Shown: in pieces, positions 2,003-59,200 of the stretch
How the letters are laid out: each line of letters starts with the position of its first letter
Position numbering within the stretch: the first letter of the stretch is position 1
Assembly: GCA_002269645.1 (NCBI GenBank)
Contig: NIVC01000353.1
Coordinates: forward strand, 496,001-560,000
Reading direction: 5' to 3'
Length of the DNA stretch: 64,000 nt
Source: Macrostomum lignano
Taxonomy: Eukaryota
Notes under the pieces: model-generated
What the model was told of the DNA's origin: nothing
The model's input: the letters and a program-made list of their open reading frames with translations, nothing else
The model's database searches: none
Program-made: the position numbers and the translations under genes

Positions 2003-2950
2003 GGGCGCCCACCTAAGAGACAGTGGCGCCCACCTAAGAGACAGTGGCGCCAACCTAAGAGACAGTGGCGCCAACCTAAGAGACAGTGGCGCCAACCTAA
2101 GAGACAGTGAGACAGTGGCGCCAACCTAAGAGACAGTGGCGCCAACCTAAGAGACAGTGGCTCCAACCTAAGAGACAGTGGCGCCAACCTAAGAGACAGT
2201 GGCGCCAACCTAAGAGACAGTGGCGCCAACCTAAGAGACAGTGGCGCCAACCTAAGAGACAGTGGCGCCAACCTAAGAGACAGTGGCGCCAACCTAAGAG
2301 ACAGTGGCGCCAACCTAAGAGACAGTGGCGCCAACCTAAGAGACAGTGGCGCCAACCTAAGAGACAGTGGCGCCAACCTAAGAGACAGTGGCGCCAACCT
2401 AAGAGATAGTGGCGCCAACCTAAGAGACAGTGGCGCCAACCTAAGAGACAGTGGCGCCAACCTAAGAGACAGTGGCGCCAACCTAAGAGACAGTGGCTCC
2501 AACCTAAGAGACAGTGGCGCCAACCTAAGAGACAGTGGCTCCAGCCTAAGAGACAGTGGCGCCAACCTAAGAGACAGTGGCGCCAACCTAAGAGACAGTG
2601 GCGCCAACCTAAGAGACAGTGGCGCCAACCTAAGAGACAGTGGCGCCAACCTAAGAGACAGTGGCGCCCACCTAAGAGACAGTGGCGCCAACCTAAGAGA
2701 CAGTGGCGCCAACCTAAGAGACAGTGGCGCCAACCTAAGAGACAGTGGCGCCCACCTAAGAGACAGTGGCGCCAACCGAAGAGAGACAGTGGCGCCAATT
2801 CCTAAGAGACAGTGGCGCCAATTCCTAAGAGACAGTGGCGCCAACCTAAGAGACAGTGGCTCCAATTCCTAAGAGACAGTGAGACAGTGGCGCCAACCTA
2901 AGAGACAGTCAGACAGTGGCGCCCATCTACCCAAAAGACAGGGGCGCCGA
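2003..2950 (+). repeat. 21-bp minisatellite (AAGAGACAGTGGCGCCAACCT)n, about 40 copies
   Basis: Unit read directly; same family at 37083 (reverse) and 42240. Confidence 0.97.
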
Positions 2951-3829
2951 ACTTACATTGGGTTCTGAAAAACAAAGCTTTGATTATTATACGATATCTC
3001 GCTAAAGACGATACTAAACCAGGGGCTTCTAAAAGCTGAGCTCTAACCTATGCTGACTCCCCCTCTGCTGACTTTCTGTAGCCAAGGGGAAGCCAAATTG
3101 GAAATTTTTAATGGAATTTTGACGGAAGTTGTGCTCAGGATAGCATTTGAGTCCGAAATTCCTCTTTCCCACTCGCTCTCTCACTGACTCCCTAGAGTCG
3201 CTGGGTCGGTTCATTCCCATTTTAAGCTTGCTGTTTTACCGTAGGTCACCAATACATCAATTCGTTGTTGAAGCCAATTCTGACCTACTCGATATGCAAA
3301 GCAGTCAAGCAAAACCTATTGAAGCTATGTTAGCATAGCTTCGTTTATAATTTAGTGCCTATGAATAAATTAATAAAACCAGCAGTTGCTTGGGACTCTT
3401 GAGAAATTCTCCAACTAGTCCGAGCACATTCTCGGGAGAAGGTTATTAATGAAGAAAAGGCTCCCGTCTTTTATCTTCGGCCATAGACTACTTCAGAAAA
3501 CTATCGTTCCCTGGACGGCTTCCTGCAGTTGGAAGTCCGGGTCTTTTATTCCCCATTTGGGCCTGGCCATAGACTATAGGAACATGTTGATTTAGCCTGA
3601 CGCAATAAAACTTTGTCTATTGTAGAAAGTCTCCACACCTCCATCTACGTCAAAGTAGCTTATTTATTGGTTTGCTTTTTATTTCCTTACGAAGGCTGAC
3701 TGTCTCAAATATATACGAAGTACTTCATGGGGCAAGATGAACTTTCGAGGACACCTCAATAATACAGCGTTCGGCTTGAGTTCTAATTGAGTTTAAAGAA
3801 AATTGTATTAATTTTATGTCTGTACTTTT

Positions 3830-4380
3830 CAATACCTGTCTGTACTCTTCTATACCTGTCTCTACTCTTCTATTCCTGTCTCTACTCATCCCTACCTGTC
3901 CCTACCCTTCTATACCTGTCTGTACTCTTCTATACCTGTCTGTACTCTTCTATACCTGTCTCTACCCTTCTATACCTGTCTGTACTCTTCTATACCTGTC
4001 TGTACTCTTCTATACCTGTCTGTACTCTTCTATACCTGTCTATACTCTTCTATACCTGTCTGTACTCTTCTATACCTGTCTGTACTCTTCTATACCTGTC
4101 TGTACTCTTCTATACCTGTCTGTACTCATCTATACCTGTCCGTACTCATCTATACCTGTCTCTACTCCTCTATACCTGTCTCTACTCATCTATACCTGTC
4201 TCTACTCATCTATACCTGTCCCTACCCTTCTATACCTGTCTGTACTCTTCTATACCTGTCCCTACCCTTCTATATCTGTCTGTACTCTTCTATACCTGTC
4301 CCTACCCTTCTATACCTGTCTGTACTCTTCTATACCTGTCCCTACCCTTCTATACCTGTCTGTACTCTTCTATACCTGCC
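3830..4380. repeat. 20-bp minisatellite (TATACCTGTCTGTACTCTTC)n
   Basis: Unit read directly; same family at 14488. Confidence 0.97.
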
Positions 4381-4559
4381 TCTATAAGCTTAAACAGCCT
4401 ATTGCTATTAAATTTAGACAGAAAATTGTTTGCTAGGAACCATTATAGCAATTTAATTTCTTTGTCAAAGTACACAATAGTTGACCGGAAGTTCGACTCT
4501 TTCGAGCAATCAAAACGCGACGCCGCTCTGGCCACAACTGGCTAGCGCATTCTATATGC

Positions 4560-7500: not shown

Positions 7501-7995
7501 GGAGCGGAGTGACACCTGTTAGACAGGAATGTATCACCTGTTAGACAGGAGTGTATCACCTGTTAGACAGGAGTGTATCACCTGTTAGACAGGAGTGTAT
7601 CACCTGTTAGACAGAAGTGTATTACCTGTTAGACAGGAGTGTATCACCTGTTAGACAGAAGTGTATCACCTGTTAGACAGGAATGGCACCTGTTAGACAG
7701 GATTGTTACCTGTTAGACAGGAATGTCACCTGTTAGACTGGATTATGTCAACCTTTAGACAGGAGCGGAGTGACACCTGTTAGAGAGGAGTGTATCACCT
7801 GTTAGAGAGGAGTGTATCACCTGTTAGACAGGAGTGTATCACCTGTTAGAGAGGAGTGTATCACCTGTTAGACAGAAGTGTATCACCTGTTAGACAGGAT
7901 TGTTACCTGTTAGACAGGAGTGTATCACCTGTTAGACAGGAGTGTATCACCTGTTAGACAGAAATGTATCACCTGTGTGAGCTGTTAGACAGGAG
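7501..7995. repeat. 22-bp minisatellite (CACCTGTTAGACAGGAGTGTAT)n
   Basis: Unit read directly. Confidence 0.95.
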
Positions 7996-14487: not shown

Positions 14488-15290
14488 CTGTCTCTACTCC
14501 TACTCCTCTATACCTATCACTACTCATCTATACCTGTCTTTACTCATCTATACCTGTCCGTACTCTACTATACCTGTCTGTACTCTTCTATACCTGTCTG
14601 TACTATTCTATACCTGTCTTTACTTATCTATACCTGTCCGTACTCTACTATACCTGTCTGTACTCTTTTATACCTGTCTGTACTATTCTATACCTGTCTT
14701 TACTTATCTATACCTGTCTGTACTCTTCTATACCTGTCTGTACTATTCTATACCTGTCTTTACTTATCTATACCTGTCTCTACTCATCTATACCTGTCCG
14801 TACTCTACTATACCTGTCTGTACTCATCTATACTTGTCTCTACTCATCTATACCTGTCCGTACTCTTCTATACCTGTCTGTACTATTCTATACCTGTCTT
14901 TACTGTTCTATACCTGTCTTTACTTATCTATACCTGTCCGTACTCTACTATACCTGTCTGTACTCTACTATACCTGTCTGTACTCTTCTATACCTGTCTG
15001 TACTCTTCTATACCTGTCTGTACTATTCTATACCTGTCTGTACTATTCTATACCTGTCTTTACTTATCTATACCTGTCCGTACTCTTCTATACCTGTCTG
15101 TACTCATCTATACCTGTCTGTACTCATCTATACCTGTCTGTACTCTTCTATACCTGTCTATACTGTTCTATACCTGTCTATACTGTTCTATACCTGTCTG
15201 TACTCTTCTATACCTGTCTGTACTCTTCTATACCTGTCTGTACTCATCTATACCTGTCTGTACTCATCTATACCTGTCTATACTCTGTAT
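14488..15290. repeat. 20-bp minisatellite (TATACCTGTCTGTACTCTTC)n
   Basis: Same family and orientation as 3830-4380; follows a candidate 5'UTR donor AG|GTGAGT at 14420. Confidence 0.97.
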
Positions 15291-16408: not shown

Positions 16409-19400
16409 ATGCAGAGGCCAACGGCAGCAAACGGCTCTGGACCTCCGCCGGGGTTCTTCGCATCCACCAGTCCTGGCGGTGGCAACTTCACCCTGGCCGC
16501 ACCGTCAGCCAGCAGCAGCTCGGCAGCCGGTCAGGCCCGCCTGCCGAGAACCTACGTGGAGCCGTCGGTGAGGCCGCAGGCTTGGCGCCAGGAGGAGGTT
16601 GGCGCTGGTCTCGTCAACGGGAATTCCGCGTGGTTGCGGTGGTCGCGAGAGAGAAGAGCTTCGGTATGGCGTTGGGATATTGGAAGTAATTGAGGCTTAC
16701 AATAATAGTTTGCTATCTATATTTTAGTAGAAAACAGTCCAGTGCAGTGCTGTAAATGGCAGGCGATGACAGCATAAAGCAGTAGCTAGTAATACAAAAC
16801 ACCAAACTACAATATTATATAACATCAGTTTATATTAGATTACTGGAAACTACTGTACATTATAATACATAACAGTAGATAACAATAGATAACAGTTGAT
16901 AACAGTGGCTAACAGTGGATAACAGTAGATGACAGTGGATAACAGTGGATAACAGTAGATGACAGTGGATAGCAGTAGATACAGTAGATAACAGTAGATA
17001 ACAGTGGCTAACAGTAGATACAGTAGGTAACAGTAGATACAGTAGATAACAGTAGATAACAGTAGATAACAGTAGATAACAGTAGATAACAGTAGATACA
17101 GTAGATAACAGTAGATAGCAGTAGATGCAGTAGATAACAGTAGATAACAGTAGATAACAGTAGATAACAGTAGATAGCAGTAGATGCAGTAGATAACAGT
17201 AGATAACAGTAGATACAGTAGATAACAGTAGATAGCAGTAGATGCAGTAGATAACAGTAGATAGCAGTAGATACAGTAGATAACAGTAGATAGCAGTAGA
17301 TGCAGTAGATAACAGTAGATAACAGTAGATAACAGTAGATGCAGTAGATAACAGTAGATAACAGTAGATAACAGTAGATGCAGTAGATAACAGTAGATAA
17401 CAGTAGATAGCAGTAGATAACAGTAGATAACAGTAGATACAGTAGATAACAGTAGATAGCAGTAGATGCAGTAGATAACAGTAGATAGCAGTAGATACAG
17501 TAGATAACAGTAGATAGCAGTAGATGCAGTAGATAACAGTAGATAACAGTAGATAACAGTAGATGCAGTAGATAACAGTAGATAACAGTAGATAACAGTA
17601 GATGCAGTAGATAACAGTAGATAACAGTAGATAGCAGTAGATAACAGTAGATAACAGTAGATACAATAGATAACAGTAAATGATAGCAGATAACAGTAAA
17701 CAGTTTTTTTTTATACCGCTGACAACGTTTTTCAACGCTGACAGTACGGCAAGTTAAGTAGTATTGGCTGCGGTTAGTCCGCAGGGAGCAAGTGTTAAGT
17801 TAAGCGGGTTTTCGCTCACTCTGCTAAACATGTTACAGATTGTTCGCCAAAGTCAGCGTAAAGCTCGCGACTCAATCACGGCTATTCGAGAGCTGCCACC
17901 TCCGCTTAACGGTCGGCCCAACAGCGATCCCTTGGTTGCTACAGGCGACGGCTACGGTGGGGAATCGCTGCTCCCTTCGACACTGCCACCGCCGCGCCAG
18001 CGACAGCAGCCGATGCAACCGGCACAGAGGGGAGGCCAGCGTCGTCGAGGTCGACACCAGGTGACGGAGACGGACTTGACGATGAACCAGTGGAGCCGCC
18101 TGTTGGCCTTCTGGCAGCATCCGGTGTTTAATAGGGCTCGCATAGTTGCCATGCTGTGCGTTGGTGCCGCTTTGGTTGTCGGCGTTACCTCAGTGAGCTG
18201 TCGGGCCTGGTCGACCCACCGGATGTCGGGTGAGCATCTCAGGTCATGGAGACTGTCATCTCAGGTCATAAAGACTGTCATATCAGGTCATAGAGACAGT
18301 TATCTCAGGTCATAGAGACTGTCATCTCAGTTCATAGAGACTGTCATCTCAGGTCATAAAGACTGTCATATCAGGTCATAGAGACAGTTATCTCAGGTCA
18401 TAGAGACTGTCATCTCAGTTCATAGAGACTGTCATCTCAGGTCATGGAGACTGTCATCTCAGGTCATAGAGACTGTCATCTCAGTTCATAGAGACTGTCA
18501 TCTCAGGTCATAGAGACTGTCATCTCAGGTCATAGAGACTGTCATCTCAGGTCATGGAGACTGTCATCTCAGGTCATGGAGACTGTCATCTCAGGTCATA
18601 GAGACTGTCATCTCAGGTCATAGAGACTGTCATCTCAGGTCATTGAGACTGTCATCTCAGGTCATGGAGACTGTCATCTCAGGTCATGGAGACTGTCATC
18701 TCAGGTCATAGAGACTGTCATCTCAGGTCATAGATATAGTCATTTTAGGTCATGGAGACAGTCATCTCAGGTCATAGAGACCGTCATCTCAGGTCATAGA
18801 GACTGTCTTCTCAGATCATCGAGACTGTCATCTCAGGTCGTAGAGACTGTCATCTCAGGTCATAAGTTCCTGCATTCTATAAAGCATCCAAATTTTGAAG
18901 AGTCTAAGTGCAATTTTTTTACAAAAAATATCTGTAGACAATGTCACTTTGGCGGCATCGGGACTCTGGGACACGTGCTTTACGGCAAACGACACCTGTA
19001 TCAGTGCGTTCGATTTGCCAACCACAAACAGCGATGCTTCTGGTGAGTAGCTGCCGCTTTGGTTTGAAAGTTTTGGTCCAGTTTGAAAAGCTAGTTCAAG
19101 ACAGTGACGCAATCAGTTCAAGACAGTGACGCAATCAGTTCAAGACAGTGACGCAATCAGTTCAAGACAGTGACGCAATCGTTTCAAGATAGTGACGGAA
19201 TCAGTTCAAGACAGTGACGATGCAATCAGTTCAAGACAGTGACGCAATCAGTTCAAGATAGAATCAATACAGCTGAAGATAGGACATATTAAGCACTCTC
19301 TAACAATCATATTTGACAAAAAACTTGCAGACTGGCAAAAGTCGGTGGCCTTCCTACTGGTTTCCTCGGTACTTTTAACTGTCATTGGTTCGGTCGTAGC

Positions 19401-36306: not shown

Positions 36307-36378
36307 TCCTCGATAGTATAGTGGTCAGTATCTCCGCCTGTCACGTGGAAGGCCCGGGTTCGATTCCCGGTCGGGGAG
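36307..36378 (+). tRNA. trnD-GTC: tRNA-Asp(GTC)
   Basis: 72 nt; close match to eukaryotic tRNA-Asp; anticodon arm TCCGC-CTGTCAC-GTGGA; GTTCGATTC T-loop; T5 terminator at about 36383. Confidence 0.95.
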
Positions 36379-37000: not shown

Positions 37001-37087
37001 GGGTTGTAGCCTTAGTGTTTAGAGCGTCGGACTCACCACTGAAAGGTCTGGGGTTCGATTCTCGACCCTCTCGGAACAATTTATGTC
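37001..37087 (+). mobile_element. SINE tRNA-like head, cut off where the 21-bp array begins
   Basis: GGGTTGTAGCC..GTCGGACTCAC..GAAGGTC..GTTCGATTC..GGAAC.ATTT.TGTC matches the 5' part of the SINE at 32033; anticodon arm poorly paired. Confidence 0.7.
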
Positions 37088-37745
37088 ACTGTCTCTTAGT
37101 CTGGCGCCACTGTCTCTAAGGTTGGCACCCCTGTCTCTTAAGTTGGCGCCACTGTCTCTTAAGTTGGCGCCACTGTCTCTTAAGTTGGCGCCACTGTCTC
37201 TTAAGTTGGCGCCACTGTCTCTTAAGTTGGCGCCACTGTCTCTTAAGTTGGCGCCACTGTCTCTTAGTCTGGCGCCACTGTCTCTTAGGTTGGCGCCACT
37301 GTCTCTTAGGTTGGCGCCACTGTCTGTTAAGTTGGCGCCACTGTCTCTTAAGTTGGCGCCACTGTCTCTTAATCTGGCGCCACTGTCTCTTAGTCTGGCG
37401 CCACTGTCTCTTAGGCTGGCGCCACTGTCTCTTAGGTTGGTGCCCCTGTCTCTTAGGCTGGTGCCCCTGTCTCTTAGGCTGGCGCCTCTGTCTCTTAGGC
37501 TGGCGCCCCTGTCTCTTAGTCTGGCGCCACTGTCTCTTAGTCTGGCACCACTGTCTCTTAGGTTGGCGCCACTGTCTGTGAGGTTGGCGCCACTGTCTCT
37601 TAAGTTGGCGCCACTGTCTCTTAGGTTGGCGCCCTGTCTCTTAGTCTGGCGCCACTGTCTCTTAGGTTGGCGTCACTGTCTGTGAGGTTGGCGCCACTGA
37701 TCTTAGGCTGGCGCCCCTGTCTCTTAGGCTGGCGCCACTGTCTGC
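37083..37745 (-). repeat. 21-bp minisatellite, same family as 2003-2950, reverse orientation
   Basis: TTGGCGCCACTGTCTCTTAAG/G units. Confidence 0.96.
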
Positions 37746-37879: not shown

Positions 37880-40800
37880 TTAAACCTCTCCATCGTCAAA
37901 TAATAACAAATCGGTTTTGCCGGCCACCACCGTCGGAACCGCCGACGGCCTCTCCGGTGCTCGTCGTTTCGGCGGCTGTCGTTGAACTTGAGCAGCTGAT
38001 GGTCCTGCGGAATTCCTGTCAGCTGATGCTGTATTATCAATATTTACACTTCCACTACTGTCAACTGCAGTATTATTGCGCGTCTGCTGCGTCAGCCTCC
38101 TACGCCGTAGTTCCAGCCGCTCTTGGCCAATCTGCCGACGCCTGTCGGGGTCGCTGATGCGCCACTGGTAGGCGCATTGGCAGGCGAGAGTGGCCGCGGC
38201 CAGCAGGGCCAGGGCCAGGCCGGAGGCGAGCGCTGCACCAGCCAGTCTGCCTGATAGGCGAGTGACGGGTTCGCGGCACGGGCCGGAGTCCGGCTGATGG
38301 GTGGCAGGGGGCTGCGGAGTTGTTATATGCGCACGTTGGAGTTCGGGGAATTTTGTGGGAGATTACAATATAAACAGGAATCTGTTGGGAAATTTGGTGA
38401 GGAATCAAGCAGGGGAATTTGTAGAAATCAGAAGGAAATCCATAGGAAATCTGTAGGAAATCAATTGGGGCATCTGTTAGGGGGAATCCGTTAGGGGAAT
38501 CCGTTAGGGGAATCCGTTATGGGGAATCCGTTAGGGGAATCCGTTAGGGGAATCTGTTGGGGAATCCGTTAGGGGAATCCGTTAGGGGAATTCGTTAGGG
38601 GAATCCGTTAGGGGAATCCGTTAGGGGAATTCGTTAGAGGAATCCGTTAGGGGAATCCGTTTGGGGAATCCGTTTGAGGGATCCGTTTAGTGGAGACAGT
38701 TGGGAGAATCCATTTGAAGAATACGTTAGGGGAATCCATTGGGAAATCCATTCGAGGGATTCGCTGGGGGAATCCGTTTAGTAACCGTAAGGGTGAAGGC
38801 ATTTATTAGGAAATTCATTGAAAAATCAGACTTAGGAATTAGCATGTTTCTGCGTTTCATCAAGCGTGAAAATGTGCTTCTCAAGAATATTTAATATCCG
38901 AAGTCAGAAAAGTAAGGAAAAATCAGGAGGAGGCCAGAAGAGTCAGGGAACGGATCCCCTAACGGATTCCCCAACATATTCCCCAAACGGATTCCCCAAA
39001 CGGATTTCCCTAACGGATTCCCCTAACGAATTCCCCTAACGGATTCCCCTAACGGATTCCCCAACATATTCCCCAAATAGTCAGGGGGAATCACGAGGGG
39101 GCCAGAAGAGTCAGGGGGAATCAGGAGGAGGCCACAAGAGTCAGGGGGAATCACGAGGAGGCCACAAGAGTCAGGGACAATCACGAGGAGGCCAGAAGAG
39201 TCGGGGAGAATCAGGAAGAGGCCACAAGAGTCAGGGGGAATCACGAGAAGGCCACAAGAGTCAGGGGGAATCAGGAGGAGGCCAGAAGAGTCAGGGGGAA
39301 TCACGAGGAGGCCACAAGAGTCAGGGGAATCACGAGGAGGCCACAAGAGTCAGGGGAATCACGAGGAGGCCACAAGAGTCAGGGGAAATCACGAGGAGGC
39401 CACAAGAGTCAGGGGGAATCACGAGGAGGCCACAAGAGTCAGGGGAAATCACGAGGAGGCCACAAGAGTCAGGGGGAATCAGGAGGAGGCCAGAAGATGA
39501 GTCAAAGTTGATGAAAACAACTTGAAGAAAAAAGCAATAAAAACACCCAGAAGCAAACTCAGAAGCAAACTCAGAAGCAGCTCACCAAGTTCTTTTGAGT
39601 CACAGCAGGCGTAACAACCGATCCATTGCCATCCTTGTCTCCAAGGACTCCAGCGGCGCCAGCAGAAGGCGATTGCGGACACACCGACCGATGCGCCGTG
39701 GTGAAATTCCATCCGCTACAGTTCAATTCCGTTTGCAGACGGTCCACCAGCCAATCTGTGCGACAGTCGCGTACAAGCTGAAAGTTGCGTTCAACGACTC
39801 GCAGAGCAGAGTCGCGACCGGCAAAACAGGCGGCACCGAGGAACAGGGAGGTCCCGGCAAGGAGCAGCAAGGCGCCCAGGTGTAGCAGAGTCGCTTGGAC
39901 TCGGCCGGTGCGCAGCGAAGTCCAGCCGAATATGCCCGCCAGGGCCAGTAGCAGAGGCAGGAGGAGAGCCACCGAGCTGGCCTGTGACGGTGATGGGGTT
40001 GAAGGTTTGGGTATGATGGAGATAGGGAGAGAAGGGACGGAAAGGAGACAGAGAAGTTGAGGAGGCAGACAAAGGAGAGATATAAGTGGAGAGTAAAGGA
40101 GAAAAAGGAGAGAGAAATGGAGAGAGACAGACAAAAGAGAGAGATAAGTAGAGAATGATGGAGAGAAGGGAGAGAGAGAAGTGAAGAAGGAGCTGTAGAC
40201 AAAGGAGAGAGAAGTGGAGAGGGATGGAGACAAAGGAGAGAGAAGTGGAGAGGGATGGAGACAAAGGAGATATAAGTGGAGAGGGATGGAGACAAAAGAG
40301 AGAGAAGTGGAGAGGGAGAGAGACAAAGGAGAGAGAAGTGGAGAGGGATGGAGACAAAGGAGAGAGAAGTGGAGAGGGAGAGAGACAAAGGAGAGAGAAG
40401 TGGAGAGGGATGGAGACAAAGGAGAGAGAAGTGGAGAGGGATGGAGACAAAGGAGAGAGAAGTGGAGAGGGATGGAGACAAAGGAGAGAGAAGTGGAGAG
40501 GGATGGAGACAAAGGAGAGAGAAGTGGAGAGGGATGGAGACAAAAGAGAGAGAAGTGGAGGGATGGAGACAAAGGAGAGAGAAGTGGAGGGATGGAGACA
40601 AAGGAGAGAGAAGTGGAGGGATGGAGACAAAGGAGAGAGAAGTGGAGGGATGGAGACAAAGGAGAGAGAAGTGGAGAGGGAGAGAGACAAAGGAGAGAGA
40701 AGTGGAGAGGGAGAGAGACAAAGGAGATATAAGTGGAGAGGGATGGAGACAAAGGAGAGAGAAGTGGAGAGGGATGGAGACAAAGGAGAGAGAAGTGGAG

Positions 40801-41685: not shown

Positions 41686-42239
41686 CTTCCCCTGTTTCTA
41701 TTCAATTAAGAAATTGAAATGCTATTGCGGTTGAATTTCGGCAAGCATTTTCTTGAGCTGCTCGCAGTAAAGCTACCAGGTATTTGGTTGTGGAAATGGT
41801 TTGTCACCCTATTGAATGCATGCAGTGTGGGCCTATGCATAATATATAAACATATTGCACTGCAAGTCCTTATCTACAATCTTACATAGCAGTCGTGGCG
41901 CCATGGGTAAGAGAGTTGCCAACATGCGTTGCAAATAGGCCTTAAATGTACACGTCTGCCGCGACCAGGAAATTGAAAATCTTTTTTGCGCAATTTGCGT
42001 GTTTTAGGCTTGAATTAATTGTACGTTTAAGCTCGTGCATACAGTGCTTTGGCCTTGAGAGTTTCGTCACGTGTTTTGCAGAAGAAGAGCGCTGCTTTCT
42101 TTCTGGGCAATAAGTGCTTTATGCCGAAACTGAAACTGCCTGATTATACAGTTTTATCTGGGACTTTCCACAAGACTGATTTAAGTAATTTTAGTAGCTT
42201 CTGATTGTAACTTGAAATGAAACTATATAGCAATTAAAT

Positions 42240-44742
42240 ATAAGACAGTGGCGCCATAATAGTAGACAGTGGCGCCATAATAAGAGACAGTAGCGCCAAC
42301 CTACATGTAAGAGACAGTGGCGCCAACATACATGTAAGAGACAGTGACGCCATAATAAGAGACAGTGGCGCCAACCTACATGAAAGAGACAGTGGCGCAA
42401 ACCTACATGTAAGAGACAGTGGCGCCATAATAAGAGACAGTGGCGCCAACATACATGTAAGAGACAGTGGCGCCATAATAAGAGACAGTGGCGCCAACCT
42501 ACATGTAAGAGACAGTGGCGCCATAAGAAGAGACAGTGGCGCCAACCTACATGTAAGAGACAGTGGCGCCATAATAAGAGACAGTGGCGCCAACCTACAT
42601 GTAAGAGACAGTGGCGCCATAATAAGAGACAGTGGCGCCAACCTACATGTAAGAGACAGTGGCGCCATAAGAAGAGACAGTGGCGCCAACCTACATGTAA
42701 GAGACAGTGGCGCCATAATAAGAGACAGTGGCGCCAACCTACATGTAAGAGACAGTGGCGCCATAATAAGAGACAGTGGCGCCAACCTACATGTAAGAGA
42801 CAGTGGCGCAAACCTACATGTAAGAGACAGTGGCGCCAACCTACATGTAAGAGACAGTGGCGCCAACATACATGTAAGAGACAGTGGCGCCATAATAAGA
42901 GACAGTGGCGCCAACCTACATGTAAGAGACAGTGGCGCAAACCTACATGTAAGAGACAGTGGCGCCAACATACATGTAAGAGACAGTGGCGCAAACCTAC
43001 ATGTAAGAGACAGTGGCGCCAACCTACATGTAAGAGACAGTGGCGCCAACATACATGTAAGAGACAGTGACGCCAACCTACATGTAAGAGACAGTGGCGC
43101 AAACCTACATGTAAGAGACAGTGGCGCAAACCTACATGTAAGAGACAGTGACGCCATAATAAGAGACAGTGGCGCCAACCTACATGTAAGAGACAGTGGC
43201 GCCAACCTACATGTAAGAGACAGTGGCGCCAACCTACATGTAAGAGACAGTGGCGCCAACCTACATGTAAGAGACAGTGACGCCAACCTACATGTAAGAG
43301 ACAGTGGCGCCAACCTACATGTAAGAGACAGTGGCGCCAACCTACATGTAAGAGACAGTGGCGCCAACATACATGTAAGAGACAGTGGCGCCATAATAAG
43401 AGACAGTGGCGCCAACCTACATGTAAGAGACAGTGGCGCAAACCTACATGTAAGAGACAGTGGCGCCAACCTACACGTAAGAGACAGTGGCGCCAACCTA
43501 CATGTAAGAGACAGTGGCGCCATCCTACATGTAAGAGACAGTGGCGCCAACATACATGTAAGAGACAGTGACGCCATAATAAGAGACAGTGGCGCCAACC
43601 TACATGTAAGAGACAGTGGCGCCAACCTACATGTAAGAGACAGTGGCGCAAACCTACATGTAAGAGACAGTGGCGCCAACATACATACATGTAAGAGACA
43701 GTGACGCCAACCTACATGTAAGAGACAGTGGCGCCATAATAAGAGACAGTGGCGCCAACCTACATGTAAGAGACAGTGGCGCCATAAGAAGAGACAGTGG
43801 CGCCAACCTACATGTAAGAGACAGTGGCGCCATAATAAGAGACAGTGGCGCCAACCTACATGTAAGAGACAGTGGCGCCATAATAAGAGACAGTGGCGCC
43901 AACCTACATGTAAGAGACAGTGGCGCCAACCTACATGTAAGAGACAGTGGCGCCAACCTACATGTAAGAGACAGTGGCGCAAACCTACATGTAAGAGACA
44001 GTGGCGCCAACCTACATGTAAGAGACAGTGGCGCCAACATACATGTAAGAGACAGTGGCGCCATAATAAGAGACAGTGGCGCCAACCTACATGTAAGAGA
44101 CAGTGGCGCAAACCTACATGTAAGAGACAGTGGCGCCAACCTACATGTAAGAGACAGTGGCGCCAACATACATGTAAGAGACAGTGGCGCCATAATAAGA
44201 GACAGTGGCGCCAACCTACATGTAAGAGACAGTGGCGCAAACCTACATGTAAGAGACAGTGGCGCCATAATAAGAGACAGTGGCGCCAACCTACATGTAA
44301 GAGACAGTGGCGCAAACCTACATGTAAGAGACAGTGGCGCCAACCTACAGGTAAGAGACAGTGGCGCTAACATACATGTAAGAGACAGTGGCGCCATAAT
44401 AAGAGACAGTGGCGCCAACCTACATGTAAGAGACAGTGGCGCAAACCTACATGTAAGAGACAGTGGCGCTAACATACATGTAAGAGACAGTGGCGCCAAC
44501 CTACATGTAAGAGACAGTGGCGCCAACCTACATGTAAGAGACAGTGGCGCCAACCTACATGTAAGAGACAGTGGCGCCAACCTACATGTAAGAGACAGTG
44601 GCGCCAACCTACATGTAAGAGACAGTGGCGCAAACCTACATGTAAGAGACAGTGGCGCAAACCTACATGTAAGAGACAGTGGCACCAACCTACATGTAAG
44701 AGACAGTGGCGCCAACCTACATGAAAGAGACAGTGGCGCCAA
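42240..44742 (+). repeat. 2.5-kb composite minisatellite of 27-bp (AAGAGACAGTGGCGCCAACCTACATGT) and 21-bp (AAGAGACAGTGGCGCCATAAT) units
   Basis: Read directly; shares the AAGAGACAGTGGCGCC core with arrays at 2003 and 37083. Confidence 0.97.
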
Positions 44743-44769
44743 ATTTTTGTACTAATGTACTAATTTAAT

Positions 44770-44892
44770 TGGCCTACTGGGGGAATTGCTGAAATGTCAA
44801 GGCTTACTGGGGAATTGCTGAGATGTCAAGGCTTACTGGGGGAATTGCTGAGATGTCAAGGCTTACTGGGGGAATTTCTGAGATGTCAAGGC
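44770..44892. repeat. 30-bp repeat (GCTGAGATGTCAAGGCTTACTGGGGGAATT), about 4 copies
   Basis: Read directly. Confidence 0.9.
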
Positions 44893-45319
44893 AAATATAT
44901 ATAGGATTCACAGAAATAATTTTTCGCTCTTGCTTATTGGGCGCCCCGAAGGGAGGCACTAGATTGCAATTTCTGTACTAATTTAATTTGGCCGAGCTAC
45001 TCAGAAACTTTGGCTGACGAGAACTGTTTGTATAAAAAATAGCGCACATTATATTGAATCGGTTAAATAATTGAAACTCGATATTAATAAATCTTCTACG
45101 CGTGAATGGTCAGATTTGTGGAAGTTTCACGCAATTCAAATTGTTTTGTATCGTTGTCATGTATTTGAAAAGGAAAGGCAGATCAATAAAGACATCTAAA
45201 TCTGAAAATTGCTAATAGTTGCTTACTAAAAACAGTTAACTTGGCATGAAAATTAGTAACTGCAAACTCGTGGAGTGCCTCAGCTCTCTGCCTAAAGCTA
45301 GTTGAAAACCCTCCTACAG

Positions 45320-48221: not shown

Positions 48222-48582
48222 TAGGGCGCCAAATGAAGACAGTTGGGGGCGCTAAATGAAGACAGTTGGGGGCGCCAAATGAAGACAGTTGGGGGCGCCA
48301 AATGAAGACAGTTGGGGGCGCCAAATGAAGACAGTTGGGGGCGCCAAATGAAGACAGTTAGGGGCGCCAAATGAAGACACTTAAGGGTGTCAAATGAAGA
48401 CAGTTGGGGGTGCCAAATGATGACACTTGGGGGCGCCAAATGAAGACAGTTGGGGGCGCCAAATGAAGACAGTTGGGGGTGCCAAATGAAGACAGTTGGG
48501 GGTGCCAAATGAAGACAGTTGGGGCGCCAAATGAAGACAGGGGCGCCAAATGATGACACTTAGGGGCGCCAAATGAAGACAG
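48222..48582. repeat. 23-bp minisatellite (GGCGCCAAATGAAGACAGTTGGG)n in the probable GGACT-2 3'UTR
   Basis: Read directly; nearest minus-strand AATAAA is at about 47918. Confidence 0.94.
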
Positions 48583-49217: not shown

Positions 49218-51043
49218 CTCTCTCTCCCTCTCACCACTCTCTCTCCCTCTCACCATTCCCTCTCCCTCTCACCCCTCTCTCTTCCTCTTACCACTCACTC
49301 TCCCTCTGACCACTCCCTCTCCCTATCACCACTCCCTCTACCTTTCACCACTCTCACCACTCTCTCTACCTTTCACCACTCTCACCACTCACTCTACCTC
49401 TCATACCTCACACCACTCTCTTTCCCTCTCGCCACTCTCTCTTCCTCTCACCATTCCCTCTCCCTCTCACCCCTCTCTCTTCCTCTCACCACTCACTCTC
49501 CCTCTCACCACTTTCTCTCCCTCTCACCATTCCCTCTCCCTCTCACCACTCACTCCACCTCTCACCACTCACTCTCCCTCTCACCACTTTCTCTCTCTCC
49601 CTCTCACCACTTTCTCTCTCTCCCTCTCGCCACTCTTTCTCTCCCTCTCACCACTCACTCTCCCTCTCACCATTCCCTCTCCCTCTCACCCCTCTCTCTT
49701 CCTCTCACCACTCACTCTCCCTCTCACCACTCACTCTCCCTCTCACCACTCACTCTCCCTCTCACCACTCACTCTCCCTCTCACCCCTCTCTCTTCCTCT
49801 CACCACTCACTCTCCCTCTCACCACTCACTCTGCCTCTCACCACTCTTTCTGTCCCTCTCACCACTCTTTCTGTCCCTCTCGCCACTCTTTCTCTCCCTC
49901 TCACCACTTTCTCTCCCTCTCACCACTCACTCTACCTCTCACCACTCCCTCTCCCTCTCACCACTCACTCCACCTCTCACCACTCTCTCTCCCTCTCACC
50001 ACTCTCTCTCCCTCTCACCACTCACTCCACCTCTCACCACTCACTCTCCCTCTCACCACTCACTCTGCCTCTCACCACTCACTCTGCCTCTCACCACTCA
50101 CTCTGCCTCTCACCACTCACTCTGCCTCTCACCACTCCCTCTCCCTCTCACCACTCACTCCACCTCTCACCACTCTCTCTCCCTCTCACCACTCTCTCTC
50201 CCTCTCACCACTCACTCCACCTCTCACCACTCACTCTCCCTCTCACCACTCACTCTCCCTCTCACCACTCACTCTGCCTCTCACCACTCACTCTGCCTCT
50301 CACCACTCACTCTGCCTCTCACCACTCACTCTGCCTCTCACCACTCACTCTGCCTCTCACCACTCACTCTCCCTCTCACCACTCACTCTGCCTCTCACCA
50401 CTCACTCTCCCTCTCACCTCTTTCTCTCCTTCTCATCACTCTCTCTCTCTCTCCCTCTCATCACGACTCTGTCTTTCACACCCTGGCCACTCTATATCCA
50501 ATAGATTTCTCATTCTCACTCCATCACCACTTTATTTTTCTTCCACTGGCAGATTGACTCAATCCTCAATCTAACGCCAAACCAAGCCTGAACTGACCTG
50601 GGCACAGTGGGCAGCAACAACAGGTGCTCCCTAGGTCTCTGCAGAAAATAGCAATCACACTCGATAGATCCTGAACCGCCAATGCCAGCCCCGAACTCAG
50701 ACTCTGCTCCAGGAGTTTTAGCCAATTCAATGAGTTCAACGACAATTTTAGCCCGTCTGTACTGCTCAGGGTGTCCTTCGAATTCGTCAACTCTAGTCGA
50801 GTCTCGGACAGCGTACAACTCGCCCTGCACTCGATGACCCCTACCCGGATAGTCCAACAGAGCTGGTATGTTATACTCTGACGCAATCACTAACGGATAG
50901 GGCTTCACGGTTTTTGCAGTGCCCAATAATTTAGCGCCGATTTGTTGCATTCTGAATCCGTTCGGCAGGTCGGATTTCAATGTGCCATAGGTGAATATTA
51001 TTAGAGGCTGATGCTGTTGCGGCTGTTGTTGTTGCGTTTCCAT
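48641..51043 (-). CDS. GGACT: Gamma-glutamylamine cyclotransferase-like paralogue 2, 194 aa; exons 51043-50598, 48779-48641
   Basis: IFTYGTLKS, KPYPLVIASEYNIPALL, VQGELY, VDEFEGHPEQYRR; phase-2 join PR|YYDG via GTCAGT and TTCTCAG. Confidence 0.9.
48840..50460. repeat. 17-19-bp CT/CA-rich minisatellite (CTCTCACCACTCACTCTCC)n plus (CT)n in the GGACT-2 intron
   Basis: Read directly. Confidence 0.95.
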
Positions 51044-53256: not shown

Positions 53257-56200
53257 TCACTTCCACACCCGGCAGGTGTTGTCCTTGCTGCCAGTAATAA
53301 TCGTATTGCCTTCGTAGTTGAAAGCGCAGCTAAATATTTCGTCAGTGTGTCCCTCCAGAGCTTGAGTCTGCTTACCGGTCTCGCAGTCCCACAGTCTGGC
53401 AGTTTTATCAGCTGACGCAGTCAGCAGCCTGGTGCCCTGCGGATTGAAGCACACCTTGCTGACTTCGCCTTCGTGGCCTTCAAGTTTGCATAGCAACCGG
53501 AAGCTGCCGCGGATGTCCCAGCAGCGGCCGGTGGCATCCGCGCTGGCCGAGGCGAGGCGGTGACCGGGCAAGTCGAAGGCCACGTCCAGCACCTCGTCCT
53601 CGTGACCGCCCAGGGTCTGCATGACTCGGCCTTGGCGGACGTCCCACACCTGACATTTGGGGGTGAGATGGAAGTAGGATTTGAGGATAAGAAAGGAAGT
53701 GAGATAGAGGTGAGATTGGAGATGAAGATGAAGGTGAGATTTGAGGTGGGTTGGAAGTGAGATTGGAGATTAGATAGGAGATGAAATGCAGGTAAGATTG
53801 GAGATGAGATGCAGGTGAGATTGGAGCTGAGATGCAGGTGAGATTGGATATGAGATGCAGGTGAGATTGGATATGAGATGCAGGTGAGATTGGAGATGAG
53901 ATGCAGGTGAGGTTAGAGATGAGAAGCAGAAAAGATTTTGGGTAAGACGGGAGGTGCGATTTTTTAAGTTTAGAGATACGATGCAGATGAGATTTGGGTT
54001 GACATAAAGTTGAGATTGGAGATGAGATGGAGGTGAGATTAGATATGAGATTGAGATACGATTGGAGATGAGATGCAGATAAGATTTGGAGTGAGACGGG
54101 GGTGAGATTGGCGATAAGATGGAGGTGAGATTTGGGTGAGATTGGAGATGAGATATAGGTGAGAGTGGAGAAGAGATTGGAGGTGAGATTGGAGATGAAA
54201 TGGGGTGATATTGGAGATGAGATGGAGGTGAGATTGGAGATGAGATGGAGATGAGATTTGGAGTGAGACGGAGGTGAGATTGGCGATGAGATGGAGGTGA
54301 GATTGGAGATGAGATGGAGGTGAGATTTGGGTGAGATTGGAGATGAGATATAGGTGAGATTGGAGAAGAGAATCTCGGAGGTGAGATTGAAGATGAGATG
54401 GAGGTGAGATTGGAAATGAAATGCGGGATGAGATTTAGAATTGATTTACCTTTGTTGCCCACCTGTCCGCTATATGACCCCTATCCCTCACAGCAGCCCC
54501 CACATCGAACATGTGGAACTCACCTTGACTTTCTTATCCATAGACGCGGTAGCAACCAGAGTGGCATCCCAGTTGAACACGGCGGCGGAGATCTCAGCTG
54601 TATGACTGACCAACTGTTGAGTTCGTTTGCCGCTGCGCGAGTCCCACAGGCAGACTGTGTGATCAAAACTAGCCGTTAGAACGTCCGAACCTTGCTGACT
54701 AAACTGCATGCCGATCACTTCGGCTGTGTGCCCGTTCAATGTGCACAGCTCCACCCCGGTCTCAACGTCCCACAGCTTAGCTTGGGTATCCATTGAGCCA
54801 GTGCCCAGCATAGTAGAGGTGGGATTAAACTGCAGAGTGACAATCTCGGCCGTGTGACCGCGAAACGTGTGATGCAGTGTGCCCCTCTCGGCAGACCACA
54901 GTTTGGCAGTTTTATCAAAACTACCAGTGCCAATCTTGTCAGAGTAGGGCAGGTTGAAGGCGATGGCGTAAACTACATTGCGATGACCTTCTAGTGTGAA
55001 TTTCTCCTCGCCAGATCCGGTGTCCCACACTTTGCAGGTTCGATCGTAGGAGCCGGTGATGAACTCCGTGCCGTTCTTGTTGAAGGCTACGTTTGTCAAT
55101 GGCAGGATGTGGGCTCGCAGCACCTGGACATTGCGGTTGGAAAAATTGATTGTAGGTTGAATTGTTTGCTTTCGGTGTTTAGCTTCTAATAAGATGGATT
55201 GGCTCAGATTAATGCAAAAGTGTCTGCCATTCTGTCTGCCTTCTGTCCGCCATTGTGTCTGTCTTCTGTCTGCCATTGTGTCTGCCTTCTGTCTGCCATT
55301 GTGTCTGTCTTCTGTCTGCCTTCTGTCTGCCTTCTGTCCGCCATTGTGTCTGTCTTCTGTCTGCCATTGTGTCTGCCATTGTGTCTGTCTTCTGTCTGTC
55401 TTCTGTCTGCCTTCTGTCTGCCTTCTGTCTGCCATTGTGTCTGCCTTCTGTCTGTCATTGTGTCTGTCTTCTGTCTGCACCATTGTGTCTGCCTTCTGTC
55501 TGACATTGTGTCTGCCTTCTGTCTGCCATTGTGTCTGCCTTCTGTCTGTCATTGTGTCTGTCTTCTGTCTGCCTTCTGTCTGCCATTGTGTCTGCCTTCT
55601 GTCTGCCATTCTGTCTGCCATTGTGTCTGTCTTCTGTCTGCCATTGTGACTGACTTCTGTCTGCCATTGTGTCTGTCTTCTGTTTGCCATTGTGTCTGTC
55701 TTCTGTTTGCCATTGTGTCTGTCTTCTGTCTGACATTGTGTCTGTCTTCTGTCTGACATTGTGTCTGCCTTCTGTCTATCATTGTGTCTGTCTTGAAGGG
55801 GTATCAGCCGCCAGCCGGCCTCACCTTGAACAGGGAGAACTGGCTGTCATAGACCTCGGCCAGTTTTTTCTGCAGTTTGCCAACCAACTCGCGCAGCTGA
55901 GGAACCCGCTTGTCCGTGATGAGCGGCTCCTTGCGGACAATCTCCTCTATGATGCTGTCTACATTGGAACTGAAACAAAAGAATAATGAAATTGATATAT
56001 TTTAGTAATTATTCTGCAGGCAAAAAAGTTAAAATTGGTACTCACTGAGGCGTTAGATCGAGCAAATCAAGCGCTTTGGTTTTCAGCTGACCACCTTGTT
56101 CATATTCAAGAATAATTCCTACAAAACCGGATTTTTTATGTAAGTTAAATATTATCTAAACTTAAACAAGTAGTCATAACATGCAGACTTGCAAAGAAAT

Positions 56201-59200
56201 ATTTTATCATAAATAGATTAATCAGGTAGAAATGGAAAAGTATGTGGCATTTTGGAAAATTGGTTATTTTAGGGCAATGGTCGCCAAGGGAACAAAGAAG
56301 AGGAGGACCAGAGGAGAGGAGAGAGGAGGAAGAGAAGAGGAGAGGAGAGAGGAGGAAGAGAAGAGGAGAGGAAAGAGGAGGAAGAGAAGAGGAGAGGAAA
56401 GAGGAGGAAGAGAAGAGGAGAGGAAAGAGGAGGAAGAGAAGAGGAGAGGAAAGAGGAGGAAGAGAAGAGGAGAGGAAAGAGGAGGAAGAGAAGAGGAGAG
56501 GAAAGAGGAGGAAGAGAAGAGGAGAGGAAAGAGGAGGAAGAGAAGAGGAGAGGAGAGAGGAGGAAGAGAAGAGGAGAGGAAAGAGGAGGAAGAGAAGAGG
56601 AGAGGAAAGAGGAGGAAGAGAAGAGGAGAGGAAAGAGGAGGAAGAGAAGAGGAGAGGAGAGAGGAGGAAGAGAAGAGGAGAGGAAAGAGGAGGAAGAGAA
56701 GAGGAGAGGAAAGAGGAGGAAGAGAAGAGGAGAGGAAAGAGGAGGAAGAGAAGAGGAGAGGAAAGAGGAGGAAGAGAAGAGGAGAGGAGAGAGGAGGAAG
56801 AGAAGAGGAGAGGAAAGAGGAGGAAGAGAAGAGGAGAGGAAAGAGGAGGAAGAGAAGAGGAGAGGAAAGAGGAGGAAGAGAAGAGGAGAGGAGAGAGGAG
56901 GAAGAGAAGAGGAGAGGAGAGAGGAGGAAGAGAAGAGGAGAGGAGAGAGGAGGAAGAGAAGAGGAGAGGAGAGAGGAGGAAGAGAAGAGGAGAGGAGAGA
57001 GGAGGAAGAGAAGAGGAGAGAAAAGAGGAGGAAGAGAAGAGGAGAGGAAAGAGGAGGAAGAGAAGAGGAGAGGAGAGAGGAGGAAGAGAAGAGGAGAGGA
57101 AAGAGGAGGAAGAGAAGAGGAGAGGAGAGAGGAGGGAAGGGAGGGGAGGAAGGAGAGGAAAGAGGGAAGGGAGGGGAGGAAGGAGAGGAGAGAGGAGGGA
57201 AGGGAGGGGAGGAAGGAGAGGAAAGAGGGAAGGGAGGGGAGGAAGGAGAGGAGAGAGGAGGGAAGGGAGGGGAGGAAGGAGAGGAAAGAGGAGGGAAGGG
57301 AGGGGAGGAAGGAGAGGAGAGAGGAGGGAAGGGAGGGGAGGAAGGAGAGGAGAGAGGAGGGAAGGGAGGGGAGGAAGGAGAGGAAAAGAAGAGGAGAAGA
57401 GAAGAGAAAGGTGATCGAAGAGATCTAAGAAGAGACAAAAACACAGAGGCCCACATTTCTATATTGAAGTTTCAAAGAACACGAGGGCCAGATAGAGAGG
57501 CTTTGCGGGCCACATGTGGTCCATGGGCTGGAGTTTGCCAGCCAGTGTTTTAGGAGGATTCATTAGGTTATTAGATTAGTGTCTTAGAATTTCCAAATAC
57601 TAACCATGTATATAGCAAATAGTATTGCACTTGTAGAAAATTTGCATATTGGCAATCAAAATGATACTAATCTATGGTAATAATAGTATAAAAATATAGT
57701 CTATATTAACCATTGTTCTAAATCAAACAGTAGCGCAACCAGAAATTTTTCAAGGGGGGGGGCGGATTCTGAGGGTAAAGTCCCGGGAGGGGGGGCGGCG
57801 GAGGGGTGGCTCTGTTTTTGGCGAAAATTCGCTTGGTCCCCCTTTGATTTTTTTTCGGTCCCCCGCCTAAGGGGGGGGGCGACCGCCCCCCCCCCGCCCC
57901 CCCCCTGGTTGCGCCACTGAAATCAAACAAAGTGCTTACAAATTTTTGCTTCATTGCATGTATATAATTAAAACAAAACTATGTAATAATTCATTTTGTT
58001 TTAACAAATAAAAAATAGAACATAGTGTGGTGTTTTAAATAGCCATAAATTTTCCTAGCTTAAAAAAGCTTCTTTAGCTGGTGCCAATTGCAGTTTCTTT
58101 ATTTAATTTATTTTGTTTTTTCTTACTTTTTTTCTAAAAATTAGCATTGTGAATCCATGTGTCATAAACTTGATTTTTAATGCTCCATTTTTCTTAAAGC
58201 CTCCTAGGCTCCTAAAGCCCTAAAGCCTTCTAAAGCCTTACTACTCAATCTGAGCACAATGTGCCTGCAATTTCTCAACAACCGCTGCCTTTTTTAAGAC
58301 ATGCCATGTGTTATCCCATCCTAAATTTCCTTATTTATGAGCCAAAATCTACATCCCCTAAAACTCTTAACTTTTTAAATACAAACATCTCAGTCATGAA
58401 TCCTTTAATTCTTATTTATCCCTAAATTTTTCTTTTCATTTATGAGCCACAATACCAATACTCAAATATTGACTTACTCAAAATCTTTGCCCTTATATCA
58501 AAGTGATTATTTGGTATTCAAATTATCAAGTTTCCAATTCTGATTTGAACTATATATTTGGAATGCTTCTAGGAAAGGTATCCACACGTTTTGGTGCCTA
58601 TGCTTTTCGGTGCCTGGCATCTTGGTGCCCCAGTTTCCCCAGTTTGCTTTCCAGTGCCTAAATTATAAAGTGGAATTGGTCACAAAAAAATAGAAAGGTG
58701 AGCCCTAATAATTAGCAATAAGTGCTTTGCAATACTTCTTTCAATAAGGTGTTTCCATTATTCTTCCTTTTGTTAAGCTGACCTGCTGTTTTAATTTTAA
58801 AGAAAGTCTCTCATTTCCTCTAAATTTTGTCTCCACTCAATTTCCCAAGAAAAACTTGATCATGCATGTGACTAAAGAAATCAATACTAAAATGGATTTG
58901 TCACACTTCATAATTTCTATCAAAATTATACATGTAACATAGTTGATAGATTTCATCTTTACCTAACTAAGTCTTCTTAATCTTAACATGCATGCTAAGT
59001 GCAGCCTTGTATATACAGGATATAGCAAATGCTTGCAATTAAATCAAATGGATTTTTTAAGTTTAAGAAACACATCAGTTTAACAAAATGGGTACTTCTT
59101 TCTTTAGGAAGAAAAAAAATTTTGTCAAGTATTTATTATATTTATCATCAGATTACTTTTTTATTACAAGTATTTAGGCATCATAAACTGAGACACCAAA

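What the first reader, a model, noticed from the sequence alone, without database searches (positions are those of the whole stretch)
2003..57919. Commonest minisatellite unit looks like a tandemised hAT-MITE terminal inverted repeat
Seen: arrays at 2003-2950, 37083-37745 and 42240-44742 (about 4 kb in total, both orientations) repeat CAGTGGCGC(C/A)AACC plus a short spacer. The MITE at 57728-57919 (8-bp TSD) has the TIR CAGTGGCGCAACCAG. The first array ends in CAGGGGCGCC, another hAT-like end. Known: hAT transposases bind CAG-initiated TIRs. Inference: these arrays are amplified transposon ends, either left by repeated or abortive transposition or acting as transposase decoy or binding arrays; this would explain how one unit disperses.
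Basis: partly seen in the sequence, partly recalled or inferred. Interest (0 to 1): 0.7.

Follow-up and report, generated by a model that had tools for sequence, protein, structure and literature searches.

The report
Minisatellite family resembling a transposon tip
Three tandem-repeat arrays share a short motif with the end of a nearby small hAT-type transposon, but nothing else ties them to transposition, so this is an ordinary minisatellite family that may once have been seeded from a transposon end.

Summary
Arrays at 2004-2950 (+), 37083-37745 (-) and 42240-44742 (+) repeat CAGTGGCGC(C/A)AACC plus a spacer: 42, 29 and 97 units, about 4.1 kb. The element at 57728-57919 has an exact 8-bp duplication (AAATCAAA) and 15-nt inverted ends, CAGTAGCGCAACCAG / CAGTGGCGCAACCAG.

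The likeness to the tip is short: 9 nt, a 1-nt indel, then 4 nt. It beats chance (p about 0.003-0.007). A fourth array, at 19093-19258, matches the whole 15-nt end at 13/15.

- No array flank resembles the element's interior, another array's flank or any transposon end.
- No array has 8-bp duplications.
- No hAT transposase gene lies in the window.

The arrays share the whole 21-nt unit, spacer included. They therefore descend from one ready-made unit, not from repeated or abortive transposition at each site. Other, non-tip-like families in this window (43% tandem repeat) also recur at several sites.

Best reading: an ordinary minisatellite family grown by slippage and unequal exchange. The odds are about even that its founding unit came from a hAT-type end. 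No copies outside the window could be found. This would be a known kind of thing; interest is low to moderate.

The parts
2004..2950 (+). Array 1: 42 units of the 21-nt unit CAGTGGCGCCAACCTAAGAGA, with degenerate edge units (the last reads CAGGGGCGCCGAAC)
   Evidence: TRF; sequence; unit census
37083..37745 (-). Array 2: 29 units with the same 21-nt consensus, on the reverse strand. It has more variant units (AACTT, AGACT, AGCCT) and some GGTGCC/GGCACC cores. Its low-coordinate end abuts a tRNA-like fragment.
   Evidence: TRF; sequence
42240..44742 (+). Array 3: 97 units. The 27-nt unit is the 21-nt unit plus CATGTA; it is interspersed with the 21-nt unit CAGTGGCGCCATAATAAGAGA. Shows a higher-order pattern (period 129).
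   Evidence: TRF; sequence
41876..41935 (+). Degenerate relic of about 2.5 units (CAGTCGTGGCGCCATGGGTAAGAGAGTTGCCAACATGCGT), 300 bp to the left of array 3
   Evidence: Sequence. Read by eye; TAAGAGA lies within 4 nt of one of only four TGGCGCCA sites in unique sequence.
19093..19258 (+). Separate 22-nt array (7.4 units) whose unit contains CAGTGACGCAATCAG, 13/15 ungapped to the element's end
   Evidence: Only 0.016% of real unique 15-mers match this array as well.
48224..48582 (+). 23-nt array GAAGACAGTTGGGGGCGCCAAAT, with variants CAGGGGCGCCAAAT. Possibly a distant relative of the family.
   Evidence: nhmmer with the family unit gives only E = 0.02-0.04.
57720..57927 (.). hAT-type miniature element at 57728-57919, shown with its 8-bp target-site duplications AAATCAAA. 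It has 15-nt inverted ends and a G/C-run interior that is itself partly self-complementary.
   Evidence: Its interior has no other copy in the window.

Best explanation
The three arrays are one ordinary minisatellite family. All descend from a single founding 21-nt unit. They grew and are kept uniform by replication slippage, unequal exchange and gene conversion. They reached three sites as ready-made repeat seeds, without transposase, as several other families in this repeat-dense region have done. They are not present-day transposon ends.

The 13-14 nt that the unit shares with the tip of the hAT-type element at 57728-57919 is a real, better-than-chance likeness. I put the odds at about 45% that the founding unit was copied once from a hAT-type end plus about 7 adjoining bases. 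Otherwise the likeness is a coincidence.

Shown: the anatomy of the arrays, the whole-unit homology between them, the absence of transposon hallmarks at their edges, and the statistics of the likeness.

Inferred: the growth mechanism, the route of dispersal, and the origin of the founding unit.
For: - Head-to-tail units with interspersed variants and a higher-order pattern, typical of unequal exchange.
- Degenerate edge units and a decayed 2.5-unit relic nearby.
- Identical 21-nt consensus in arrays 1 and 2. Array 3 differs by one 6-nt insertion, so the homology covers the spacer as well as the tip-like part.
- No flank similarity between arrays or to the element.
- No 8-bp duplications at the arrays.
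- The window-wide scan for duplication plus inverted end finds only the small element.
- No solo units elsewhere in the window.
- No transposase reading frame.
- 43% of the window consists of 44 arrays. Other families recur at several sites in both orientations without flank homology.
- For the possible seeding: likeness p about 0.003-0.007, and a second array with 13/15 identity to the whole end.
Against: - The likeness to the tip is stronger than expected for unrelated sequence. Against this family alone, 1 of 5000 shuffles match it. A purely ordinary origin therefore leaves a coincidence unexplained.
- Only 64 kb could be examined. Composite copies (element plus array) could exist elsewhere in the genome.
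- How a repeat seed moves to a new site without flanks is not shown.
- Arrays 1 (+) and 2 (-) face each other with the same consensus, 34 kb apart. This could hint at a very large composite element, though no shared duplication was found.
Confidence: 0.7

Rival explanations
1. One reading: the arrays are amplified hAT ends made at each site by repeated or abortive transposition, and being a transposon end is what lets the unit disperse.
For: The tip likeness beats chance. A second array matches the whole 15-nt end at 13/15. hAT-derived elements whose long ends are built of tandem repeats, and satellites derived from inverted ends (Xstir from Xmix, Tetris), are documented (PMC12368964; PMC9659126).
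Against: - The arrays share the non-tip spacer TAAGAGA, so they were not made independently at each site.
- No 8-bp duplications, no element interior and no second end at any array.
- The arrays do not begin at the CAG tip.
- The conserved core AAGAGACAGTGGCGCCA runs 6 nt outside the tip, while the inner tip positions vary most.
- Families with no likeness to the tip disperse equally well.
Confidence: 0.1
2. The arrays are cargo of some other mobile element whose ends were not recognised here (for example a rolling-circle element or an element with long decayed ends). That element spread them.
For: Tandem repeats carried inside small transposons and Helitron-type elements are common in some animals (PMC12628747; PMC9659126). 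Array 2 abuts a tRNA-like dispersed fragment that has a second copy at 31954-32033. A 9-nt inverted match brackets array 3.
Against: The 400-nt flanks of the three arrays share nothing. Self-comparison of the masked window shows no repeat family next to more than one array. The 9-nt inverted match is AT-rich and was not tested for significance.
Confidence: 0.1
3. The shared motif is functional. The arrays are multi-site binding platforms or sinks for a hAT transposase, a domesticated relative, or another protein that reads the palindrome TGGCGCCA. They are kept for that reason.
For: The core CAGTGGCGCC is 91-100% conserved per position in array 1 and mostly 96-100% in array 3, where position 10 falls to 77%. 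It contains an 8-nt perfect palindrome. That palindrome occurs four times in 36 kb of unique sequence, against about 0.5 expected by simple arithmetic. The CpG in the core is mostly intact.
Against: High unit identity is what gene conversion gives without any selection. The equally conserved TAAGAGA has no counterpart in the element. In the best-studied hAT transposase (Hermes), binding depends on short subterminal AAG(T/C) sites as well as the tip; the older GTGGC proposal was withdrawn (PMC10368747). There are no binding data of any kind.
Confidence: 0.05
4. Kinship runs the other way. The small element was born when two inverted satellite-like units happened to bracket a G/C-rich stretch and were mobilised by a hAT transposase.
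For: The element's ends are only 15 nt long and equal the repeat core at 13-14 positions. Arrays of the family occur in both orientations, so inverted unit pairs exist.
Against: The ends lack the extra C of the main family. No unit spacer sequence lies next to them. The direction cannot be told from one copy.
Confidence: 0.05

Closest known systems
Satellites derived from transposon inverted ends: Xstir from the Xmix element in Xenopus, and TIR-220 arrays from Tetris in Drosophila virilis (PMC9659126 table 1; PMC12628747 section 4)
   Same: A tandem repeat unit resembles the inverted end of a small non-autonomous DNA transposon in the same genome.
   Different: In those cases the unit covers a long stretch of the element. 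Three forms are seen: element, array, and composite of both. Here the shared stretch is 13-15 nt, the unit is 21-27 nt, and no composite form is present in the window.
Atlantic cod gadMor-hAT-1784 / hAT-8043: hAT-derived elements whose 600-bp ends are made of 167-169-bp tandem repeats, plus related simple-repeat derivatives (PMC12368964)
   Same: hAT-type non-autonomous elements linked to tandem arrays, found in a genome dense in tandem repeats.
   Different: The cod arrays map onto a defined element consensus and keep the inverted-arm architecture. Here no element consensus around the arrays can be built, and the units are eight times shorter.
Ordinary minisatellite (VNTR) families with shared cores, and satellite 'libraries'
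   Same: Units of 20-30 nt, interspersed variants, a higher-order pattern, degenerate edges, several loci sharing one unit, and neighbouring families that share short cores (AGACA in 11 of 34 families).
   Different: The unit carries a better-than-chance likeness to a transposon tip, which most minisatellites do not.

Membership tests
hAT superfamily, non-autonomous miniature element (the element at 57728-57919) | 8-bp target-site duplication | tested here: met
   AAATCAAA lies on both sides. The one-mismatch scan found no such structure in 10 shuffled windows.
hAT superfamily, non-autonomous miniature element (the element at 57728-57919) | Short inverted ends beginning YARNG (own knowledge of the superfamily) | tested here: met
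   15-nt ends begin CAGTA / CAGTG, 14/15 between arms.
hAT superfamily, non-autonomous miniature element (the element at 57728-57919) | Target-site consensus nTnnnnAn (own knowledge) | tested here: inconclusive
   AAATCAAA has the A at position 7 but not the T at position 2. One copy cannot decide.
hAT superfamily, non-autonomous miniature element (the element at 57728-57919) | A matching autonomous element encoding a hAT transposase with the same ends | not testable with these tools
   No transposase reading frame in the window.
Tandem repeats derived from a transposon inverted end | Unit homologous to the inverted end | tested here: inconclusive
   The main family shares 9 nt, a 1-nt indel, then 4 nt. 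The 19093 array matches at 13/15. p is about 0.003-0.007 after allowing for all arrays. The match is too short to prove descent.
Tandem repeats derived from a transposon inverted end | Composite or intermediate copies: an array attached to the rest of the element | tested here: not met
   No flank matches the element's interior or flanks. The AAATTTTT match at array 3 is not significant. This covers three arrays only.
Tandem repeats derived from a transposon inverted end | Target-site duplications around array-bearing copies | tested here: not met
   No shared 8-mers at the array edges, nor between the outer edges of arrays 1 and 2.
Tandem repeats derived from a transposon inverted end | Genome-wide co-occurrence of element and array, and lineage-specific appearance | not testable with these tools
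   Scans of metagenome, prokaryote-genome and viral collections found no copy. The translated-repeat search was empty.
Ordinary minisatellite family | Head-to-tail units of 10-100 nt with variant interspersion or a higher-order pattern | tested here: met
Ordinary minisatellite family | Length polymorphism between individuals | not testable with these tools
   Only one sequence is available.
Transposase-binding or decoy array | Demonstrated binding of the cognate transposase to the unit | not testable with these tools
   No protein and no binding data. Hermes recognition relies on subterminal AAG(T/C) sites as well as the tip (PMC10368747).

The most novel reading that the evidence does not exclude
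The arrays are tandemised hAT ends that still engage a hAT transposase or a domesticated relative. They would act as sinks that damp transposition, or as pairs of facing ends (array 1 + and array 2 -, 34 kb apart) that permit alternative transposition and large local rearrangements in this repeat-dense region.
Probability: 0.06. Interest if true: 0.6.

Novelty: new member of a known kind. Interest (0 to 1): 0.25.

Why it matters
If the founding unit really came from a hAT end, this would be one more example of a transposon end seeding a satellite, and an unusually small one: a unit made of tip plus about 7 bases. That process is already documented in frogs, flies, bivalves and cod. It would help explain where some of the very many minisatellite families in this genome come from.

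It would not change how satellites or hAT elements are thought to work, unless transposase binding to the arrays were shown.

The negative results matter for the scan. A short likeness to a transposon tip, without duplications, attached element sequence or composite copies, is not evidence that an array was made or moved by transposition.

Tried and rejected
1. LTR end plus primer-binding site. I read ACA|G|TGGCGCC as a possible LTR end followed by the complement of a tRNA 3' end. No LTR structure exists in the window, and the only tRNA gene there (Asp) does not match. Dropped.

2. The Hermes/hobo GTGGC subterminal motif as a reason for transposase binding. The proposal was re-evaluated in favour of AAG(T/C) (PMC10368747). 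Dropped.

3. Array 3 continuing into the element's interior. AAATTTTT is shared with the left subterminus of the element, but 1.3% of random 30-nt windows do as well and five flanks were tested. Not significant.

4. Arrays 1 and 2 as the two arms of one 35-kb composite element. The orientation fits, but there is no shared duplication and no flank homology.

5. Array 2 as the tail of a tRNA-derived SINE. A tRNA-like fragment abuts it and has a second copy at 31954-32033, but that copy carries no such array.

6. A superfamily joining this family to the 19093, 48224 and 5146 arrays. Whole-unit alignment does not exceed shuffled controls, and nhmmer gives E = 0.02-0.4. Only the core is shared.

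7. External copies.
- The metagenome scan gave two bacterial contigs with a chance two-copy repeat.
- The prokaryote-genome and viral scans were empty.
- The protein search with the translated repeat (LAPLSLR)n was empty.
- The exact-protein look-up of the GGACT-like reading frame was empty.
- The sequence strings appear in no relevant paper: the single hit was an unrelated cancer paper.

8. Naming the organism. The best DAW1 match is only 67-77% identical, so neither the source genome nor a close relative is within reach.

9. An E2F-like reading of GGCGCCAAA. This came from memory only and cannot be tested here. Not pursued.
Full report
**What the window is.** The window comes from a eukaryote and carries genes.
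- Two exons of a dynein assembly factor (DAW1/WDR69) lie at 53257-53649 and about 54488-55200 on the minus strand. Their best database matches are only 67-77% identical, so neither the species nor a close relative is within reach.
- There is also a GGACT-like reading frame (50516-51043), a zinc-finger reading frame and a tRNA-Asp gene.
- The striking feature is repeat density. 44 tandem arrays, about 34 unit families, cover 27.5 kb, or 43% of the window.

**The observation.**
- Splitting them at the CAGTGGCGC core gives 42, 29 and 97 units.
- Arrays 1 and 2 have the identical consensus CAGTGGCGCCAACCTAAGAGA.
- Array 3 mixes CAGTGGCGCCAACCTACATGTAAGAGA (the same unit with CATGTA inserted) with CAGTGGCGCCATAATAAGAGA, in a higher-order pattern.
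- The C/A variant is real.
- CAGGGGCGCC at the end of array 1 is a degenerate last unit, not another transposon end.

The small element at 57728-57919 is well defined. It has exact AAATCAAA duplications and 15-nt inverted ends that begin CAGTG. A scan of the whole window for such structures found this as the only convincing one (one mismatch; the two other hits have 2-3 mismatches and no transposon-like tip), and none in 10 shuffled windows. An 8-bp duplication plus a CAG-type short end is the signature of the hAT superfamily (own knowledge). No transposase gene is present in the window to confirm it.

**Is the likeness more than chance?** The alignment is CAGTGGCG-CAACC against CAGTGGCGCCAACC. 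The A-variant shares 11 consecutive bases.

| Null model | Result |
|---|---|
| Composition-matched shuffles of the end, against 38 unit consensus sequences | 6 of 2000 reach the observed score; 7 of 2000 reach the anchored 9-mer |
| Same, keeping CAG fixed | Similar result |
| Real 15-mers from unique sequence, against every variant in every array: first 9 bases found in some array | 5.0% |
| Same: within 2 mismatches of some array 15-mer | 2.3% |
| Same: both criteria, as the end does | 0.7% |
| Shuffles against this family alone | 1 of 5000 |

The 22-nt array at 19093-19258 contains CAGTGACGCAATCAG, which is 13/15 ungapped over the full end. Only 0.016% of real 15-mers match that array as well. 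This second array shares the core with the first family, so it is not fully independent evidence.

For scale, exact 10-12-nt matches between other units and arbitrary unique sequence are common in the window. What is special is only that this match falls on the tip.

- Flanks. 400 nt on each side of each array were compared with each other, with the element and its flanks, and with the whole window. Nothing matched except neighbouring arrays and a tRNA-like fragment beside array 2.
- Duplications. No 8-mer is shared across any array, nor between the outer edges of the inward-facing arrays 1 and 2.
- Continuation into the element. AAATTTTT follows both the last unit of array 3 and the left end of the element. 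However, 1.3% of random windows do as well and five flanks were tested.
- Solo or seed units. None were found outside the arrays, apart from a decayed relic of about 2.5 units at 41876-41935.

**What the units themselves say.** The arrays are homologous over the entire unit, including TAAGAGA, which lies outside the supposed tip.
- Within arrays TAAGAGA is 89-100% conserved.
- Variation is concentrated at positions 10-14, the inner part of the tip-like stretch.
- The conserved core is AAGAGACAGTGGCGCCA. It straddles the tip rather than coinciding with the end.
- The arrays do not begin at the CAG.

Independent tandemisation of an end at three sites would give three different spacers, so the arrays must descend from one ready-made unit. 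That removes 'repeated or abortive transposition' as the way these arrays were made. It leaves at most a single seeding event.

**Dispersal.** Recurrence at several sites, in either orientation and without flank homology, is general in this window.
- The unit TGTCTGTACTCTTCTATACC forms arrays at 3817 and 14501.
- GGGGAATCCGTTA occurs inverted at 38467 and 38949.
- The families at 189, 7506 and 30870 are related to each other above shuffled controls.

None of these resembles the tip, so being a transposon end is not needed to explain dispersal. AGACA, which overlaps the CAG of the unit, occurs in 11 of 34 families (1.8% of shuffles reach this count). (AGAC)n microsatellites are also nearby.

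**Outside the window.** No copy of the array or the element was found.
- The metagenome scan gave only two bacterial contigs with a chance two-copy repeat.
- The prokaryote-genome and viral collections gave nothing.
- The search with the translated repeat was empty.
- No relevant paper contains the sequence strings.

The decisive genome-wide census could therefore not be done.

**Most likely explanation.** This is an ordinary minisatellite family that grew by slippage, unequal exchange and conversion from one founding unit, and spread as repeat seeds without transposase (confidence about 0.7). Whether the founding unit was itself copied from a hAT-type end is about an even bet.

Rivals, all weakly supported or not testable here:
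- Formation or spread that depends on transposition (0.1).
- Cargo of an unrecognised element (0.1).
- Functional binding arrays (0.05).
- The reverse direction of descent (0.05).

**Comparison with what is known.** Satellites derived from inverted ends or from small transposons are well documented: Xstir/Xmix, Tetris, bivalve elements, and cod hAT-derived elements whose ends are built of tandem repeats (PMC9659126, PMC12628747, PMC12368964). Those cases rest on long homology and on composite copies, and both are lacking here. For hAT transposases, recognition involves subterminal sites beyond the tip (PMC10368747), so an array of tips is not obviously a good binding platform.

**Verdict.** This is a known kind of phenomenon, of low to moderate interest.

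Noticed in passing
window 1-64000: 43% of the window (27.5 kb) consists of 44 tandem arrays from about 34 unit families, mostly with 20-30-nt units, plus long (AGAC)n, (CAGA)n, (TCTA)n and (TAGA)n tracts. They are interleaved with real exons. The arrays create many long spurious reading frames.
   Followed up: partly
units of the arrays at 189, 1175, 2004, 3817, 7506, 9637, 19093, 30870, 40067, 48224 and 55221: AGACA/TGTCT occurs in 11 of 34 unit families (only 1.8% of shuffles give any 5-mer that count), and AGACAG in 6. This may be a shared minisatellite core, or ancestry from (AGAC)n tracts.
   Followed up: partly
3817-4378 and 14501-15286; 38467-38778 and 38949-39074; 189-704, 7506-7976 and 30870-31745: Other unit families also recur at several sites: the same strand 10 kb apart, an inverted pair 170 bp apart, and three related families. 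None has flank homology.
   Followed up: partly
14107, 16583, 41896, 61363: The 8-nt palindrome TGGCGCCA occurs four times in 36 kb of unique sequence, against about 0.5 expected by simple arithmetic. Two sites share TTGGCGCCAGGA and two share TGGCGCCATG.
   Followed up: no
58578-59262: An inverted-repeat structure of about 685 bp with 59-nt arms (81% identical). Each arm carries three spaced copies of TTGGTGCC, which would be TTGGCGCC after CpG decay. No clear tips or duplications were found.
   Followed up: no
60704-60823 and 62611-62729: Arms of about 120 nt (79% identical) bracket about 1.8 kb. This may be another DNA transposon remnant.
   Followed up: no
37001-37086 and 31954-32033; tRNA-Asp at 36306-36379: A tRNA-like fragment with an intact T-arm, not called as a tRNA, abuts array 2. 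It has a 77% identical second copy, so it is probably a tRNA-derived SINE. A genuine tRNA-Asp(GTC) gene lies 700 bp upstream.
   Followed up: partly
53257-53649 (-), about 54488-55200 (-), 50516-51043 (-), 35385-35873 (-): DAW1/WDR69 exons with minisatellites in the sequence between and beside them, a GGACT-like reading frame, and a reading frame with a reverse-transcriptase-like motif (by eye; no Pfam hit at E <= 0.01).
   Followed up: partly
44745-44775 and 44965-44995: A direct repeat of about 25 nt (TTGTACTAATTTAATTGGCC) brackets the small array at 44771-44892, just to the right of array 3.
   Followed up: no
L001 365-404, L002 193-232: Two bacterial metagenome contigs carry a perfect two-copy 20-nt repeat, CCAGACAGTGGCGCCACCGG. 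It contains the same 14-nt core as the window's unit. I take this as coincidence.
   Followed up: partly
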